DNA of 51,732 nucleotides from Guillardia theta CCMP2712 (GCF_000315625.1 NW_005434651.1:92205-143936), one strand, 5' to 3'; shown: positions 3,899 to 10,018, counted from the stretch's first letter. The notes: generated by a model not told the origin, from the sequence alone. Numbers and translations are program-made.

Positions 3899-4024
3899 GT
3901 TCGCATGGGAGTCCTTCGCAACGTCGGAAGCTCCTAGTAGAAGCACAGCAAGGAGGATCGAACAATCATGACTAGGGCGCTGGCGTGATGCGACGACCAG
4001 CAACAATATCAGCGTGAAGGAAGG

Positions 4025-4230
<206 letters not shown>

Positions 4231-4284
4231 AGGATTCAGGACTTGCGCCTGCTCGCCATGGCAGCCTCCGCAACTTTCGACCAA

Positions 4285-4390
4285 ACCTTGGAACTTTGAA
4301 CTTGAACATTGAAAGTTAAGAATGTTTGAAAGTTTCAAGGGTCAAATTTTTGTGGACAAATTTGAAATTTCAAAATTAGTTTCAAAAGTG
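4285..4390. promoter_or_regulatory. TTGAA/TTCAA-rich putative bidirectional promoter
   Basis: AT-rich patch with clustered TTGAA/TTCAA words, including palindromic TTGAAATTTCAA, between two divergent genes and ending a few nt before ATG 4397. Confidence 0.45.
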
Positions 4391-4396
4391 CCGCCT

Positions 4397-7300
4397 ATGC
4401 AGGGCAGAGCCGACTGTAACGGAGGTCAGGGAGGAGGAGGAGGGGGAGGAGGAGAACACGGAGATGAAGGAAGAGAAGATGGAGAGAAATGGGAGAAGCA
4501 GGATGTCCCAAATCAGGTCTCAGGTCCTTCGGATCAAGATCAACAAGCGCAGGCAGATCAAACACAGGAAGCCATGCCGCTCGAGGGTTCAACTCAACAG
4601 CAAGGGACAGGCATGAAAATGCAGGATGATGGCCAGGAGGCACAAGAGGAGGTGAATTCATAGAGCAAGCCTCATCTGACGTGTTCCGCTGACAGAATGA
4701 CTACCTGTAGGTGCCGGCTGGTTGGAGCCGCGATGGTGATGGGAAACTGAAGCCGATCAAAGGAGAGATCATCGCCGTCGACTTCAACGCCAGTGGATCT
4801 TCCTCCCTCCAGGACAGATTTCGTAACTTCAGGTTGAACAAGATGAAGTCACAGAGGCAGGAGGCAATCAACTCCAAGAAGAAGCAGGAGGAGCGACAAG
4901 ATCCTGCGAAAATGCAGGAGCTACGACAGATGTTCATTGATAGATGCAAGTCGTACTATGGTGTCCCTTACGCCAAGAAGTATCATCAGCCTGACTCTGA
5001 GCTCTACAACTCCAAGAAGTTCCTTGACTGCTGCGGCCTCGTCCGGCAGGTTCTGCGCGACATGAAGAACGAGCTCGGGTTCTCGCCCGGGCCCTGGAAT
5101 CAGGCTTATCAGTTTGACACGCTGCCGGTGCGGTACGAGACATGGCAGGAGATGAAGCCGGGAGATCTAGTCTTTGCTGAGGGCGAGTACGTCAAGCCTG
5201 GCATGAAGCCGCAGCCAGGTAACATCGTCCACGTCGAAGTCTTCCTCGGAGGTGGTACGGAGGGCAAGTCCGTATGCGGAGCCCGTTGGAACTCAGGAGT
5301 CGTTCAGGAGTTTGACAGCTACGAGTTCGCAGCCAAGTCATGGTCGTTGACGAGATGGCACTTCTGCTCCATCGACACCTGGCTGACCGGAGTGTGCAAG
5401 TCGTTCAACCCCGACAGGAAGTGGAAGCGGAAGCAGCAGTGGGTGCCGGGCAGCCGCAGCATCTTCCATGCCGAGGAGGAGGAGGATGAGATGGCCGAGG
5501 ACGAGCTGGATGAACAAGCGGAGGAGGGAAGCGGGTTGAGCAGCAGAGCAGGCAGGAGATTTTTCGTCTCTGACCCGATGAAGTACCGGACGGTGGTGGA
5601 GGCGCTGGCGAGCAAGGGATGGCACCAGGTACCTCGGACCTGAGCTGCTCGTCTCCTCTGAGCCCTCGTTGTCCTTAGATCACGATGAAGGACGCGGAGA
5701 ACCTGAACTTCGACCTCAAGTGGACGGAGACCCTCGTGGAAGTCGACCTGGCGAGGTTTCGCAACAACGAGCAGGTGTAGGTTGCTTCCTGTGGCTCGTA
5801 GCTGCTGACGTCAGTTGCTCTCCCTCAAGATTGTGAATCACATCCCGACGCGCTTCCCGCTCTCAAACTTCAACAAGCTTATCAAGACACTCCGGTCAAG
5901 AGGTCAGCGGTCACTCCCTTGACGAGTCTCCATGAGTGACCGTTGATAACAGACAGACAAATCATGCGAGAACACAAGAAGTCGGAGGAAGGAGCCTTTT
6001 CCTCCTCCTCCTCCTCTCCCTCCTCCTCTCTCATCACCTCGGACAAGTTTGTTCCTCAGGTTGGAAGCTGCCTGCACTCTCTGCCCCGTAGCCGAACTAC
6101 TCTCAGGTTTTCGACGTCACCCTCTCCACGGACAGGATGCATCTGATTCAGATCCTGGAGGAGGGAGAGCAGGTGAAGTAAAGCGAGCGAGAGCAGCAGC
6201 AGAAATTCTTCTTCCCCTCCTCTTGTGCGCTGATCCGATCTTGGTCCTCTGGAAGACACTCGCAGCTTGCCCCTCGTTGCTTTGTTTCCGCCTCCTTCCT
6301 CCTTTGCTGTTCATGGGATTTTATTTGCGAATGGCAGAAGAACGACTCATGGGTGCTCAAGTCGGCGGGAGGATCGCAGGTTGGAATGTGGAGCGCATGG
6401 GGATGAATTCTAGAGTAGAAGACGAGAGGAGAAGGAGAGAAGAAGAGGGAGAAGTTCGCAAGCAGAAGAGGAGAGAGGAGAGAAGGCGGGGGCTGGGGAG
6501 GAGAAGATGGCAGACTCATTTCTTGGTTGCTTGCGCAGAAGACCATCATATCTAGCGATCGAGATGCGCTCCTCGATTCTTTACTCAAGAGAAGTGCCGG
6601 TCCTGACAAGAAAGGATACACCATGATCCAGAAGCACATCGCAGACCCTCTCCTCCTTCAAGATCGCAAGGTCCTCCCATCTCCTCACTCCTCCCTTCCC
6701 TGCTTTTCTGACTCTCTTGTCCTCAGTTTGCAATCCGCTGTTTCGTCCTCATCCCTCAGACTTTCCCGGCGTTCAAAATTCTCTTTCACACTGGGTGAGA
6801 CTCCTTGTGTTCCCCTTCCTCCTCCTCTCCCGTCCTCTCCTCCTCACCTTCACCACTGACAGCTACTGCTGCTCATCCTTTCAACCGCAGGTTGTGTTGT
6901 TCAGCTCTCAAGAGCTACAGCAGAGATCTGCTGGAGGAGGAGGTGCAGGACCCGTTCCTTGGGTTCAGAGTTGGGGACGCGAGCTTTGCCAGGACATGGA
7001 AACAAGCAGAGGCAAGAGCTTATCCCGCCTGCTTACTCCCCTCCTTCCTCCTTCCGCCCTCTTCCTCCCTCCTCCCTCCTCCCTCCACCCTCCTCCCTCT
7101 CCATCCGAGTAGCTGATCAAGATGCAGGAAGCGCTGGCGCAGGAGGGAGCTATCCCACGCGGTTGGTTCGATGACCAGCTGAAGGAGCAGCTGGAGACAA
7201 TCTGCCGAGAGACTTTCTGCGCTGCTAAGAATGATCTTTCCAGGGTCAGGTAAATCTCCTCTGCACCAAGACCATCAATATTTCTTCTGACTTACCTCTA

Positions 7301-7979
7301 TTTCGTTCTCTTTCCTCCCTTCCTCTCTCCACTCTCCTCCCCTCCTCTATCCCCCCTCTCCTCTCTCCTCTTCTCGCTTTTCCCTTCATCCCTTTTGTCC
7401 CCTCCTCTCCTCTTCTTGGTTCCAGGGGTTACTTCGAGCTTTTCTCCGTCGACTTCCTCGTCGACTCCTCACTGAAGCCCTGGCTCCTTCGGGTCAGTCT
7501 CCTCCCTCCTCCAGTCCTCTTGTCTCATAACATCCCCCTCCCCTCCCATCCTCCTTCATGGCCTTCCTCACTTGCCTCCTCCTCTTCCCCAGTCTCCTCC
7601 CCGGACCTCACTGTCTTTCAGGTGGGCAGCAACAAGCATCTCTCTGCTGACGTTCCCGAGCTGCGGCAAGAGCTGTTCAACATCGTCAGCGATGCTCTTG
7701 AAATCGTCCTTGAGCTCAATGAAAAGGTCGCTCCCTTGCCTTCTCCTTCTCCTGCCCTCCTTCCTCTTCTTCTCTCTCCCTACCTGCCCTTCCCGTCCTC
7801 CCGCCTTCCCTCCTGCTCTTCTCACTGGTCGTGACTTCGATGCACAGACTAAGGTAGAGGGAAAATCTCCAGCTATGGAGGAAATGGAGCAACTAAGGTG
7901 CGAGCTGGGAGTCTGTCGGGAGACAGCTGACGAGTCAGCCTGCAGAAAAAGTTCGTTCAAAGTTCTCCTCGAGGAATGA
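4397..7979 (+). CDS. NlpC/P60 (papain-like) domain fused to a degenerate tubulin-tyrosine-ligase-like (ATP-grasp) domain; ~13 exons
   Basis: NlpC/P60 motifs: YYGVPY...LDCCGLVRQV...PGDLVF...HVEVFLG. TTL motifs across spliced exons: NFDLKW, IVNHIP, FVPQVF, WVLKS, IQKHIADPLLLQDRKFAIR, GYFELFSVDFLVDSSLKPWLL. Stop at 7977-7979. Confidence 0.85.
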
Positions 7980-8108
7980 CAGTGAATCTCCGGTTGTCAT
8001 ACAAGACAACCTAGTCAGAAGAACGGGAGAGGAGAGGAGACGATTTATGTTTATGTGATGTCTTACGGTATTAAAAGTAAAGTTAGTTGTTGACATGGCA
8101 ACATGCCT

Positions 8109-10018
8109 TCACACTACGTCCAATCTCTCTCTCTCCCCCTGATAGTTGGAGCCTGGCGCCATGCTGCTAGGGCGGCTGAAGGCGTTCAGCGCATTCTTTG
8201 CGTCCTGTAAGAGCAACGTCAAACAATCTCCCAGCTGAGAAGTTTCCAGCTCACCTCGAGCTGCTTCCTCGTGTCATTCATGGTCGACCTGCTGGGCTGG
8301 GGGCCAGGGTCATGCTCAGCCACCTCCACGTCCTCCGCTCACCGCGATGCTGTTGGGTGACCTGTAGGAGTCGTAGGGAGTGTTGCGTCCAGAGTTCGCC
8401 CTGGGCTGACATCAGAAGTTGACGACCTGGGAAAGCATAGGAAACCTGCTCGACATCCGATCGGACGAGCCGCGAACTACCACGACCTCGTAGTCGACAC
8501 CTCGTCGGAGGATGCCGAGGGTGACGAGGGTGTTGGGAGGGCCCAGCAGGTGCTTCTTGACAGCGTCGACCGAGCGGTTGACCGGCCAGCCGTCGATGCT
8601 CTTGAGCATGTCGCCGACCTCGATCTTCTGCAGGTCGCCGGACTGGATTTGACACCAGGGGGCAACCTCGGTGACGAGCATGCAGGGAAGGGAGGAGTGC
8701 AGGGAGAGGCCGAGACCCACCCCCACCATGGGCGTCTGCGTTTGCATCTGTGACTGCGACTGCATCTGTGACGGGGGCTGACTGATGGGGGTAGGGGTGG
8801 GCTGAGCTGAGAGAGTTGGGCGGCTCTGGAAGGGAACTTGAGCCATGGGGTACCTCGAGCTGGAGTTGGCATATGGGGCCTGGTCGCTGATGGCGCGGCG
8901 GGGGATGAACCTGCGGTTTCCTCTAGACGCGTCTCCTCTGGTGTTCCTCAAGTCCCCTCCTGTTGCTTTGAACCTGTACGCCTCGAGGAGCAGCGACTGG
9001 TCCACCAGGTTGAGCGGCTCGACGCTGTCAGCCATGTCCTTGCTGTCCATCATGGGGAAGCGAACGTACTGCATGATGTTGGCGAGCTTCTCCCGCAGGA
9101 CGTTGGGGTCGATGTCTCCGTACCTCGCCTTACCCCACCTGACTACCGCACTGAAAGCATCCACCTCCTGAATCTGCAGCTCGTCGTTCTCCAGCAGGCG
9201 GCACACGTATGGCTCGGGAACGGCCTCGAAGGTCGGGTTGAGCATGACTGGAGTTGCGTTACGAAGGATGTAGTGTTCGCATCTAGATCAGAATCAGATG
9301 GGCTATGTCAGAACACATTGCTCGCCTGTCCACAGTGTCAGAGAGATTGAACTGTAAGGCTGACGCCAGGAGCACGTTGACAGTCTCCACCTGTTCAGAT
9401 CGAGCAAGTCATCTGGCATGCCCGGACCAACACCCGCTGATTCACCTTGAGGTACGACTCCGCAAACTGGCTGTAAGCTCGGACGAGGGGTTCAATCTGG
9501 TAGTAAGTGCTGACTGACAGAAGCTCAATGGCATGCTCGGGGTTCAAGGACAACTTCCCGCTGCGTGAAAGCATCAGAAAAGGTCGAAGAGGATATAGAG
9601 CTTTGACCTGTACATGTATGTCAGGATGTCGCTGAACGCGTCTGGATCACATTCCACGCGCAATGAGATTCTATTCGACTGCTGCACGGAGGTCAGCAGT
9701 CAGGAACGACTCCTAGAAGCATACCTTTCCACTCAAAGAAGCTAGGCCCTGTAGCTGTTGCGATTGAGCTTGCATGAGCAGCTGCGCGAAGACGCTGCTA
9801 TGCGCTGCGAGCATGTGGCGGTGACAGTTGACGCTCGCCGTCCCGCTTCCCTCGCGTCCAAGGTGAAGTGTGACGTCCCAGAAGCCCTCCTGAGAGGAAT
9901 CAAGTCACTGGAGCGAAGCTGTGGCTGAGAAACAAACATTCTCGGAAAGAGATCGTAGAAGTGAATTCTGAAATTGCTCCATGGCATATTCCTCCAAATC
10001 ATCATTGACAACAGCCAT
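8109..10018 (-). CDS. BTB/POZ-BACK-PDZ domain protein
   Basis: BTB: WDVTLHLG...HRHMLAAHSSVFAQL. BACK: LLENDELQIQEVDAFSAVVRW...VRFPMM. PDZ: GVGLGL...IEVGDMLKSIDG...LLGPPNTLVTL. ATG at 10018; last exons inferred from splice sites. Confidence 0.85.

What the first reader, a model, noticed from the sequence alone, without database searches (positions are those of the whole stretch)
4397..7979. Intact NlpC/P60 peptidase fused to an apparently dead TTL ligase domain: candidate novel tubulin-code eraser
Seen: the papain-like domain keeps its catalytic Cys (LDCCGLV) and His (HVEVFLG). The spliced TTL-like domain has lost nearly every catalytic motif: WxxKP..GxGI becomes WVLKSAGGSQ; RKFDxR becomes RKFAIR; the HLTN motif is absent; WLLEVNxxP becomes WLLR|VGSNKH. 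Known: TTL/TTLL ATP-grasp ligases need the E-x-N metal ligands, and Cys-His enzymes such as vasohibin trim tubulin tails. Inference: the pseudo-ligase may act as a tubulin/tail-binding reader that delivers an amidase or peptidase, for example a deglycylase or deglutamylase. The C-terminal part looks TTLL10-like by eye.
Basis: partly seen in the sequence, partly recalled or inferred. Interest (0 to 1): 0.85.

Follow-up and report, generated by a model that had tools for sequence, protein, structure and literature searches.

The report
Live peptidase fused to dead TTLL10
This alga-like protist expresses one protein that joins an intact NlpC/P60 cysteine peptidase to a TTLL10-type tubulin glycine ligase that has lost its catalytic residues, which makes it, and the large unstudied family it belongs to, a testable candidate for the still-unidentified enzyme that removes glycine from tubulin.

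Summary
A 2,343-nt intron-less transcript contig (L004, protein P0361) matches 15 window exons (4411-8080) at 100% identity. It carries the NlpC/P60 domain and the TTL domain in one reading frame, including the degenerate motifs.

The peptidase keeps the Cys and His that are invariant in 82 homologues, and its model folds like bacterial gamma-D-glutamyl endopeptidases. The TTL domain sits inside the TTLL10 clade and is predicted to fold. It has lost 11 of 20 key positions, including the Gly-rich loop, the KFD Asp, HLTN and both E-x-N metal ligands. Its end branch is four times longer than that of its peptidase domain.

- The fusion is not unique. NlpC/P60-TTLL10 is a widespread architecture (animals and protists), normally with an intact ligase.
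- Four close relatives have canonical motifs, so ligase death is specific to this lineage.

The genome has two TTLL3-like initiating glycylases and no other TTLL10. "Tubulin-code eraser" (most likely a deglycylase) is a reasonable inference but is not shown. No paper in the library links NlpC/P60 to TTLLs, and deglycylases were still unidentified in papers of 2024-2025.

The parts
4397..8080 (+). Whole transcription unit as far as documented. The 3' UTR reaches at least 8080.
   Evidence: Transcript contig L004 aligns at 100% identity to 4411-8080 in 15 blocks. P0361 equals the spliced translation.
4397..4651 (+). Exon 1: low-complexity Gly/Gln/Glu-rich N-terminus, with no domain.
   Evidence: (no Pfam hit).
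4711..5628 (+). Exon 2 (P0361 aa 14-319): the complete NlpC/P60-type peptidase domain with family-specific N- and C-terminal extensions, an acidic linker (5473-5545) and the first helix of the TTL N-domain.
   Evidence: Pfam NLPC_P60 scores 22.2 bits (cut-off 23). There are 171 and 736 homologues. The AF2 model has pLDDT 86.9 and its Foldseek hits are all NlpC/P60. The family profile against PDB finds DPP VI at E 2.5e-5.
5029..5031 (+). Codon of the predicted nucleophile Cys120 (LDCCGLV).
   Evidence: The column is invariant in 82 sequences. It aligns with the Cys of DCSGLVR in DPP VI 3npf.
5230..5238 (+). Codons of His187-Val-Glu189 (HVE). His is the predicted general base, and Glu189 is invariant.
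5679..5774 (+). Exon 3: TTL N-domain (LKWTE...).
5830..5902 (+). Exon 4: TTL N-domain (IVNHIP...).
5953..6059 (+). Exon 5: TTL N-domain and a Ser-rich insert.
6107..6172 (+). Exon 6.
6338..6379 (+). Exon 7: degenerate motif WVLKSAGGSQ. The ATP-binding Lys441 is kept, and Pro is replaced by Ser.
6539..6670 (+). Exon 8: the rest of the former Gly-rich loop (G448K, G450I), QKHI (Y480H), and ...DRK.
6727..6794 (+). Exon 9: FAIR (D493A in KFDxR; Arg495 is kept).
6891..7011 (+). Exon 10: the region where HLTN should be (His deleted, T528L, N529E). It ends at a GC donor.
7012..7127 (+). GC-AG intron.
7128..7249 (+). Exon 11: helical part of the TTL C-domain.
7426..7492 (+). Exon 12: GYFELFSVDFLVD...WLLR. 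Asp604 and Asp608 are kept, Gly602 is Ser, and the Mg-ligand Glu is replaced by Arg617 (7490-7492).
   Evidence: This exon alone matches Pfam TTL at E 6.8e-5.
7622..7726 (+). Exon 13: VGSNKH. The Mg-ligand Asn is replaced by Gly619 (7625-7627), and Pro is replaced by Lys622.
7848..7897 (+). Exon 14.
7946..7979 (+). Exon 15, coding part, with stop TGA at 7977-7979.

Best explanation
Shown:
- The locus is one expressed gene.
- Its product has an N-terminal NlpC/P60 papain-like amidase domain with the family's invariant Cys and His. A roughly 30-residue acidic flexible linker joins it to a C-terminal TTLL10-type ATP-grasp domain.
- That domain keeps its fold signature but has lost the Gly-rich loop, the KFD Asp, HLTN and both E-x-N metal ligands, so it cannot be an ordinary ligase.
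- It is a lineage-specific derivative of a widespread NlpC/P60-TTLL10 fusion family in which the ligase is normally intact.

Inferred mechanism:
- The dead TTLL10 domain still binds what TTLL10 binds, namely microtubules and tubulin C-terminal tails that carry a gamma-linked glycine branch.
- It thereby holds the Cys-His amidase against the tail.
- The amidase hydrolyses the gamma-glutamyl-glycine isopeptide bond or Gly-Gly bonds.
- The protein would thus be a targeted tubulin (or protein) deglycylase that opposes the two TTLL3-like initiating glycylases of the same genome.
For: One mRNA and one ORF:
- L004 and P0361 are 100% identical to the spliced exons.
- Eleven RNA-like runs hold 0.29-0.52 of the sampled 31-mers (nine of them 0.51-0.52). 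The expectation for exon-only words is 0.504.

Peptidase intact:
- C120, H187, E189, R125, R205, N143 and Q144 are invariant in 82 homologues.
- The AF2 model has pLDDT 86.9.
- The nearest folds are RipB, MepS, SagA, LytE and DPP VI, all D,L-endopeptidases that cut gamma-D-Glu amide bonds.
- A profile match to DPP VI aligns the Cys and His motifs.

Ligase dead but retained:
- 26 of 57 columns that are at least 88% conserved are changed. The changes include E617R and N619G.
- P0361 is the only full-length protein among 95 long family members with 11 of 20 key residues changed.
- Pfam TTL still scores 69 bits over the whole profile.
- The AF2 model has pTM 0.89 and its best structural matches are TTLL6, TTL and TTLL7.
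- The ORF stays open through 13 exons with all splice sites intact, despite an end branch of about 2 changes per site. This argues for selection on a non-catalytic role.

Link to glycylation:
- The domain lies in the TTLL10 clade (support 96/98), sister to relatives with active motifs.
- The fusion partner in animals is named TTLL10.
- The genome has two TTLL3-like genes and no other TTLL10.
- Named homologues come almost only from organisms with cilia or flagella. They include Chlamydomonas species, where a paper reports only TTLL3 and monoglycylation in Chlamydomonas.

From my own knowledge (not tested here):
- The order N-terminal Cys amidase then C-terminal ATP-grasp ligase is that of glutathionylspermidine and trypanothione synthetase-amidases. 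In those enzymes the amidase reverses the ligase's product.
Against: - There is no biochemical or localisation evidence of any kind.
- Substrate specificity cannot be read from the fold. The bond could equally be a gamma-linked glutamate branch, or sit on a non-tubulin protein.
- The canonical third catalytic position of NlpC/P60 appears to be an invariant Gly in this family. This is my reading of the motif by eye, and the true third residue is undetermined.
- Pfam NLPC_P60 scores just under its cut-off (20.2-22.2 against 23 bits).
- Substitutions in the TTL domain are spread over the whole domain rather than concentrated in catalytic motifs. That also fits simple relaxation.
- Many lineages have the peptidase alone, so it does not need a TTL domain to work.
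- The AF2 confidence for the TTL domain leans on an alignment of active homologues.
Confidence: 0.4

Rival explanations
1. The peptidase is the only working part, and the TTL domain is a vestige. After the ligase died the C-terminal domain became a passive tail on its way to being lost, as in lineages that have the peptidase alone. Targeting, if there is any, lies in the peptidase domain's own conserved extensions.
For: - Stand-alone homologues of 230-480 aa exist in diplomonads, choanoflagellates, green algae, Ciona, rotifers and others.
- The TTL end branch is four times that of the peptidase.
- The changes are spread over the whole domain.
Against: - About 360 codons in 13 exons stay free of stops and frameshifts, with every splice site intact, at about 2 changes per site.
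- 31 of 57 conserved, mostly structural, positions are kept, and the Pfam match spans the full profile.
Confidence: 0.2
2. It is an eraser, but not of glycine. The amidase removes gamma-linked glutamate branches (a CCP5-like job), or trims another acidic-tail modification, or acts on non-tubulin TTLL substrates.
For: - The nearest folds cut gamma-glutamyl amide bonds in general.
- TTLL10 recruitment is increased by tubulin glutamylation (PMC12340829).
- Invariant Arg125 and Arg205 would suit carboxylate-rich substrates (this is an inference).
Against: - The fusion partner across eukaryotes is specifically the glycine elongase clade, not a glutamylase clade.
- Deglutamylases are already known (CCP, TMCP), whereas no deglycylase is (PMC11244163).
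Confidence: 0.2
3. The role is non-hydrolytic. The protein would be a regulatory reader or competitor that masks glycylated tails, or the NlpC/P60 domain would act as an acyl- or peptidyl-transferase rather than a hydrolase.
For: - Some NlpC/P60-superfamily members are acyltransferases (own knowledge: LRAT/PLAAT).
- A dead TTLL10 could compete with other tail binders.
Against: - Cys and His are invariant across 82 sequences, which points to catalysis.
- The structural neighbours are the hydrolytic P60 endopeptidases, not the permuted LRAT type.
Confidence: 0.1
4. The ligase is still active through a non-canonical active site.
For: Lys441, Gln478, Lys491, Arg495, Asp604 and Asp608 are retained.
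Against: - Both E-x-N metal ligands (E617R, N619G), both loop glycines, the KFD Asp and HLTN are lost together.
- All of these positions are 98-100% conserved in 50 TTLL10-type sequences and in the solved TTL and TTLL6 sequences aligned.
Confidence: 0.03
5. It is a gene-model artefact, two genes, or a pseudogene.
For: The 5' end is not covered by the transcript contig. I could not lay reads.
Against: - One assembled transcript carries both domains in one frame.
- Relatives have the same domain order, with the two ORFs separated by only 40-64 nt.
- 79 fused proteins exist elsewhere.
Confidence: 0.02

Closest known systems
TTLL10, the elongating tubulin/protein polyglycylase (TTL family, Pfam PF03133)
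   Same: - The C-terminal domain falls inside the TTLL10 clade.
- It matches the TTL profile end to end and is predicted to have the TTL fold.
- Starfish, hemichordate, brachiopod, sponge, coelacanth, sturgeon, turtle and gecko proteins named TTLL10 carry the same N-terminal NlpC/P60 domain.
   Different: - Here 11 of 20 key residues are replaced, including both Mg ligands, the Gly-rich loop and HLTN.
- The frog, teleost and mammal TTLL10 proteins in my sample lack the NlpC/P60 domain.
Human 'inactive polyglycylase TTLL10'
   Same: It is a natural precedent for a TTLL10 that lost activity while monoglycylases remain (Rogowski et al. 2009 as cited in PMC11244163).
   Different: - From my recollection, the human protein is inactivated by a few substitutions. 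Here the whole motif set is gone and the domain has evolved very fast.
- The human protein has no peptidase domain attached.
Bacterial NlpC/P60 D,L-endopeptidases (RipA/RipB, MepS/Spr, LytE, SagA, YkfC-type dipeptidyl-peptidase VI)
   Same: - The fold is the same, and the Cys (D-C-x-G-L-V-R) and His (H-V-x-I-[FY]-L-G) motifs match.
- These enzymes hydrolyse the amide made by the gamma-carboxyl of glutamate. This is the same kind of bond as a tubulin glycyl or glutamyl branch point (own knowledge).
   Different: - Sequence identity is only 15-25%.
- The family has long eukaryote-specific N- and C-terminal extensions with their own invariant residues.
- The canonical third catalytic position seems to be Gly.
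- The protein has no signal peptide and is not in a cell-wall context.
- Pfam scores fall just below the cut-off.
Glutathionylspermidine synthetase/amidase and trypanothione synthetase-amidase (own knowledge, not tested here)
   Same: The architecture and logic are the same: an N-terminal papain-like Cys amidase joined to a C-terminal ATP-grasp ligase, with the amidase reversing the amide bond that the ligase makes.
   Different: - Their amidase is a CHAP domain and their ligase is not a TTL.
- Pfam reports no CHAP match in P0361.
- In the window's protein the ligase half is dead.
Known tubulin-code erasers: vasohibin-SVBP and MATCAP (detyrosination), CCP and TMCP carboxypeptidases (deglutamylation)
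   Same: The proposed job is the same: a peptidase that trims tubulin tail modifications. Vasohibin is also a Cys-His enzyme of the wider papain-like/transglutaminase-like group.
   Different: - The folds and families differ. P0361 matches no Pfam family other than TTL and NLPC_P60 at E <= 0.01.
- None of the known erasers is fused to a TTLL domain.
- None is known to remove glycine.
TTLL12 (own knowledge)
   Same: It is a TTL-family domain without detectable ligase activity, fused to another domain, and so a precedent for TTL pseudo-enzymes.
   Different: It belongs to a different TTLL clade, and its partner is a SET-like domain rather than a peptidase.

Membership tests
TTL/TTLL family (PF03133) | Profile match above Pfam's gathering score | tested here: met
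   P0361 scores 69 bits against a cut-off of 20.1, over profile positions 8-284 of 292.
TTL/TTLL family (PF03133) | TTL-type ATP-grasp fold | tested here: met
   The AF2 model has pLDDT 86.6 and pTM 0.89. The best Foldseek matches are TTLL6, TTL and TTLL7, with E values down to 3e-16. The model leans on an alignment of active homologues.
TTL/TTLL family (PF03133) | Catalytic and nucleotide-binding motifs: W..KP....G.GI, KFDxR, HLTN, and the E-x-N metal ligands | tested here: not met
   - Lys441 and Arg495 are kept.
- Changed: P442S, G448K, G450I, D493A, His deleted, T528L, N529E, E617R, N619G, P622K.
TTLL10 subfamily | Groups with named TTLL10 proteins to the exclusion of other TTLL clades | tested here: met
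   The ML tree places it in a TTLL10 clade with support 96/98. The window is sister to two relatives with active motifs (93/93). The own genome's TTLL3-like pair and its other paralogues lie outside. The window has a long end branch of 1.57, so its exact position is less sure.
TTLL10 subfamily | Glycine-elongating ligase activity on pre-glycylated tubulin | not testable with these tools
   This needs an enzyme assay. The motif loss predicts no activity.
NlpC/P60 (PF00877) | Profile match above Pfam's gathering score | tested here: not met
   Scores are 22.2 bits (exon 2) and 20.2 bits (P0361) against a cut-off of 23. Most homologues also score 16-21 bits.
NlpC/P60 (PF00877) | NlpC/P60 fold | tested here: met
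   The AF2 model has pLDDT 86.9, and above 90 over the core. The top 50 Foldseek matches are all NlpC/P60 proteins, with probability 1.00 for all but one (0.99). The family profile hits DPP VI 3npf at E 2.5e-5.
NlpC/P60 (PF00877) | Catalytic Cys at the start of a helix and catalytic His in a following strand | tested here: met
   Cys120 and His187 are invariant in 82 sequences. They align to the Cys and His motifs of DPP VI. In the model, helix 120-130 and strand 185-191 carry them.
NlpC/P60 (PF00877) | Third polar catalytic residue (His/Glu/Asn) about 12 residues after the His | tested here: inconclusive
   The expected position reads as a nearly invariant Gly (G203) by eye. The invariant Glu189 two residues after the His is a candidate. 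No coordinates were available for inspection.
Amidase + ATP-grasp bifunctional enzymes (Gsp/trypanothione synthetase-amidase) | CHAP-type amidase domain and Gsp-synthetase-type ATP-grasp domain | tested here: not met
   Pfam lists only TTL and NLPC_P60 for P0361 at E <= 0.01. The resemblance is in architecture and logic only.
Known tubulin erasers (vasohibin, MATCAP, CCP/M14, TMCP) | Match to those families' domains | tested here: not met
   No such Pfam family appears for P0361 at E <= 0.01.

The most novel reading that the evidence does not exclude
The eukaryotic NlpC/P60 family found here is the long-sought tubulin/protein deglycylase. The family occurs stand-alone in many ciliated lineages and fused to TTLL10 in many others. 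The ancestral TTLL10 would then be a bifunctional writer-eraser, like Gsp synthetase/amidase. The window's gene would be a natural separation-of-function form: eraser alive, writer dead, and the dead writer reused as a reader of glycylated tails.
Probability: 0.3. Interest if true: 0.9.

Novelty: new variant of a known kind. Interest (0 to 1): 0.7.

Why it matters
Enzymes that remove tubulin glycylation were still described as unidentified in papers of 2024 and 2025 (PMC11244163; PMC12340829). I found no paper in the library that links NlpC/P60 to TTLLs or to deglycylation.

A Cys-His amidase with the fold of gamma-glutamyl endopeptidases is repeatedly fused to the glycine-elongating ligase. 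It is otherwise found alone in organisms with cilia. This is a classic "Rosetta stone" pointer to the missing eraser.

The window's gene adds a natural experiment. The ligase half is dead and fast-evolving, while the peptidase half is conserved, in a genome that keeps initiating glycylases. That makes the hypothesis directly testable with one recombinant protein and one Cys-to-Ala control.

If the hypothesis is wrong, the locus is still a clean example of a pseudo-enzyme domain retained next to a live one.

Tried and rejected
   - No read-level evidence on starts, ends or minor isoforms could therefore be obtained.
   - My local alignments and motif scans left them out.
   - Locus L001, which made automatically and which covers them, was never used.
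2. Pfam on single small exons gave nothing except exon 12.
3. The first protein search could not see the gene's own product because of the length window. A search with relative P0001 found it as P0361.
4. My first splice model was wrong in two places. The acceptor is at 7128, not 7113, and I missed a 48-nt intron at 7898-7945. The transcript corrected both.
5. Hidden or alternative exons restoring HLTN, E-x-N or G.GI: none exist in any + frame of 5629-8100.
6. Are the substitutions concentrated in catalytic motifs? By my own hand tally of the columns listed, no: 14 of 27 motif columns are changed against 12 of 30 other conserved columns. I make no such claim.
7. Net charge and pI of the TTL-like domain as a proxy for microtubule binding. 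The window scores -3 and pI 6.25, close to the active protist relatives, while the animal domains are basic. This is uninformative.
8. A second, active TTLL10 in the genome: none was found. The best other match has 36% identity and is TTLL6/7-like.
9. Earlier notes of this scan: none concerns this gene or family.
10. I did not run complex prediction. No claim in this report rests on a docking result.
Full report
**What is there**

The window is eukaryotic DNA with short introns. Its genome (G000) has 87.1 Mb in 669 contigs. That size and contig count match what I recall of the cryptophyte Guillardia theta assembly, but I did not test this.

Reading 4000-8400 in three frames gave a + strand gene with a long second exon and many small exons. 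My hand-built model was then checked against public data:
- A search with a relative's protein returned P0361, 679 aa.
- Its only contig, L004, is 2,343 nt and comes from JGI sample 3300017164.
- L004 aligns at 100% identity to 15 blocks of the window: 4411-4651, 4711-5628, 5679-5774, 5830-5902, 5953-6059, 6107-6172, 6338-6379, 6539-6670, 6727-6794, 6891-7011, 7128-7249, 7426-7492, 7622-7726, 7848-7897 and 7946-8080.
- All introns are GT-AG except one GC-AG intron at 7012-7127.

L004 is therefore a spliced transcript of this very gene. It carries the peptidase and the TTL-like domain in one frame. P0361 is identical to the spliced translation from Met73 onward.

Independent support comes from eleven RNA-like runs in several studies. 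They hold 0.29-0.52 of the sampled 31-mers of 4397-7979, and nine of them hold 0.51-0.52. The share of 31-mers lying wholly inside these exons is 0.504.

Locus L001, made automatically, covers them and was never used.

**The peptidase half**

- Exon 2 alone encodes the domain. Pfam NLPC_P60 scores 22.2 bits, just under the 23-bit cut-off.
- A full scan of 1.84 billion representative proteins found 736 relatives, 457 of them at E <= 1e-10.
- In an alignment of 82 family members, Cys120 (LDCCGLV; codon 5029-5031) and His187 (HVEVFLG; codon 5230-5232) are invariant. So are Glu189, Arg125, Arg205, Asn143 and Gln144.
- The AlphaFold model has mean pLDDT 86.9, above 90 over the core.
- Its 50 best PDB matches are all NlpC/P60 proteins: RipB, MepS, SagA, LytE, CwlO and dipeptidyl-peptidase VI.
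- The family profile hits DPP VI (3npf) at E 2.5e-5, with the Cys and His motifs aligned.

From my own knowledge, those enzymes hydrolyse amide bonds formed by the gamma-carboxyl of glutamate. The canonical third catalytic position seems to be a Gly in this family, so the third residue is undetermined.

There is only one gene of this kind in the genome.

**The ligase half**

- P0361 matches Pfam TTL at 69 bits over nearly the whole profile, against 140-194 bits for fused homologues.
- Its model has pTM 0.89 and is most similar to TTLL6, TTL and TTLL7.
- In a tree with named TTLL10 proteins and twelve TTL paralogues of the same genome, it lies in the TTLL10 clade (96/98). It is sister to two unnamed relatives (93/93), but on a long branch.
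- Of 57 columns that are at least 88% conserved in 50 TTLL10-type sequences, it keeps 31. The 26 changes include P442S, G448K, G450I, Y480H, D493A, loss of the HLTN His, T528L, N529E, G602S, E617R, N619G and P622K.
- Among 95 long family proteins it is the only full-length one with 11 of 20 key positions replaced. 46 have none replaced and 10 have one replaced.
- No frame of the locus encodes a replacement HLTN, E-x-N or G.GI.

1. The fusion is common. 79 proteins in my sample have both domains. The ligase half of the starfish member is 53-58% identical to vertebrate proteins named TTLL10. Echinoderm, hemichordate, brachiopod, chiton, sponge, coelacanth, sturgeon, bichir, turtle, gecko and snake TTLL10 carry the peptidase. 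The frog, teleost, bird and mammal entries in my list did not match it. Many are single ORFs on 2-3 kb contigs, which may be transcript-derived.
2. Stand-alone versions of the peptidase occur in diplomonads, choanoflagellates, green algae including Chlamydomonas species, Ciona, rotifers, molluscs, Cafeteria, Symbiodinium and others. Almost all are organisms with cilia or flagella.
3. The closest relatives are 54-64% identical in the peptidase domain and come from metagenomes. They have the same domain order.
   - L002 and L003, which carry the whole TTL ORF, show WIIKP..G[RK]GI, RKFD[IV]R, HLTN and LLEVNTNP.
   - The truncated contigs show only the N-terminal motifs. L005 and L006 have WIVKP..GHGI and RKFDLR, and L007 has WIVKP..GHGI.
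   - Ligase death is therefore specific to the window's lineage.
4. Rate asymmetry. The window's end branch is 0.49 changes per site in the peptidase tree but 1.97 in the TTL tree, a ratio of 4.0. Other taxa range from 0.3 to 1.4, with one at 2.3.
5. The genome context fits a glycylation system without an elongase. Two genes are clearly TTLL3-like (209 and 189 bits to 5vlq, against 87 or less to other TTLs). They form the sister clade of TTLL10. No other TTLL10 exists in the genome.

**How it most likely works**

Shown: one protein with a live-looking Cys-His amidase, a flexible acidic linker (pLDDT below 50 at residues 284-293) and a folded but catalytically gutted TTLL10 domain.

Inferred:
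- The TTLL10-derived domain still recognises what TTLL10 recognises. [quoted passage not shown]
- It would thereby deliver the amidase to glycylated tails, where the amidase cuts the gamma-glutamyl-glycine or Gly-Gly amide.
- The ORF survives through 13 exons at about 2 changes per site. This argues that the dead domain is still selected for something.
- The architecture mirrors glutathionylspermidine and trypanothione synthetase-amidases, in which an N-terminal Cys amidase reverses the bond made by the C-terminal ATP-grasp ligase (own knowledge).

Rivals are a vestigial TTL tail, a deglutamylase or non-tubulin substrate, a non-hydrolytic role, and a still-active ligase. The last is unlikely.

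**Novelty**

Papers of 2024 and 2025 still call deglycylases unidentified. Searches pairing NlpC with deglycylase, TTLL10, 'tubulin tyrosine ligase', or tubulin plus TTL found nothing relevant. The one paper holding NlpC, tubulin and TTL cites NlpC/P60 only in its reference list. The library lacks many subscription papers, and the 2003 NlpC/P60 survey was not held, so prior mention cannot be excluded. Databases already label some members 'NlpC/P60 domain-containing protein' or 'TTLL10'.

**Verdict**

- It is a new, ligase-dead variant of a widespread but apparently unstudied NlpC/P60-TTLL10 family.
- The eraser function is a good, testable hypothesis and is not shown.

Noticed in passing
window 4027-4230: A perfect (GCAGGA)n microsatellite of about 34 units lies directly upstream of the gene. 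Long ORFs on both strands through it are repeat artefacts (poly-Gly-Ala, poly-Ala-Pro, poly-Leu).
   Followed up: no
window 7012-7127: The gene has one GC-AG intron among 13 GT-AG introns, confirmed by the transcript contig.
   Followed up: partly
G000:C19:860376-861605 (L012) and G000:C79:372979-373686 (L013): Two TTLL3-like genes (candidate initiating glycylases). L012 carries all three motifs scanned (W.KP, HLTN, E-x-N). In L013 the scan found W.KP and HLTN but no E-x-N in the fetched frame. They form the sister clade of TTLL10 in the tree. At least ten further TTL-family genes are present in the genome.
   Followed up: partly
proteins P0262, P0269, P0279, P0281, P0291, P0296, P0298, P0344, P0349 against frog, teleost, bird and mammal TTLL10: Among vertebrate proteins named TTLL10, those of coelacanth, sturgeon, bichir, turtles, gecko and snake carry the N-terminal NlpC/P60 domain. 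Gar and newt show only remnants. No frog, teleost, bird or mammal entry in my list matched it. This suggests repeated loss of the peptidase half, although incomplete gene models are an alternative.
   Followed up: partly
proteins P0124, P0127, P0130, P0141, P0381 and ten others: Fifteen proteins of 514-1,426 aa, several from molluscs, have the same NlpC/P60 domain but no TTL domain. Their C-terminal parts are unexplained.
   Followed up: no
window 5473-5545 (P0361 aa 268-292): The linker between the two domains is strongly acidic (a run of Glu/Asp) and predicted disordered. It resembles a tubulin tail in composition and could act as an internal pseudo-substrate. This is pure speculation.
   Followed up: no
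L002:3274-3693 and L003:3069-3416: In two relatives the fused gene is followed by a MIF-family gene on the opposite strand. I did not check whether the window has the same neighbour. An ORF on the minus strand at 8412-9245 lies downstream here and was not analysed.
   Followed up: no
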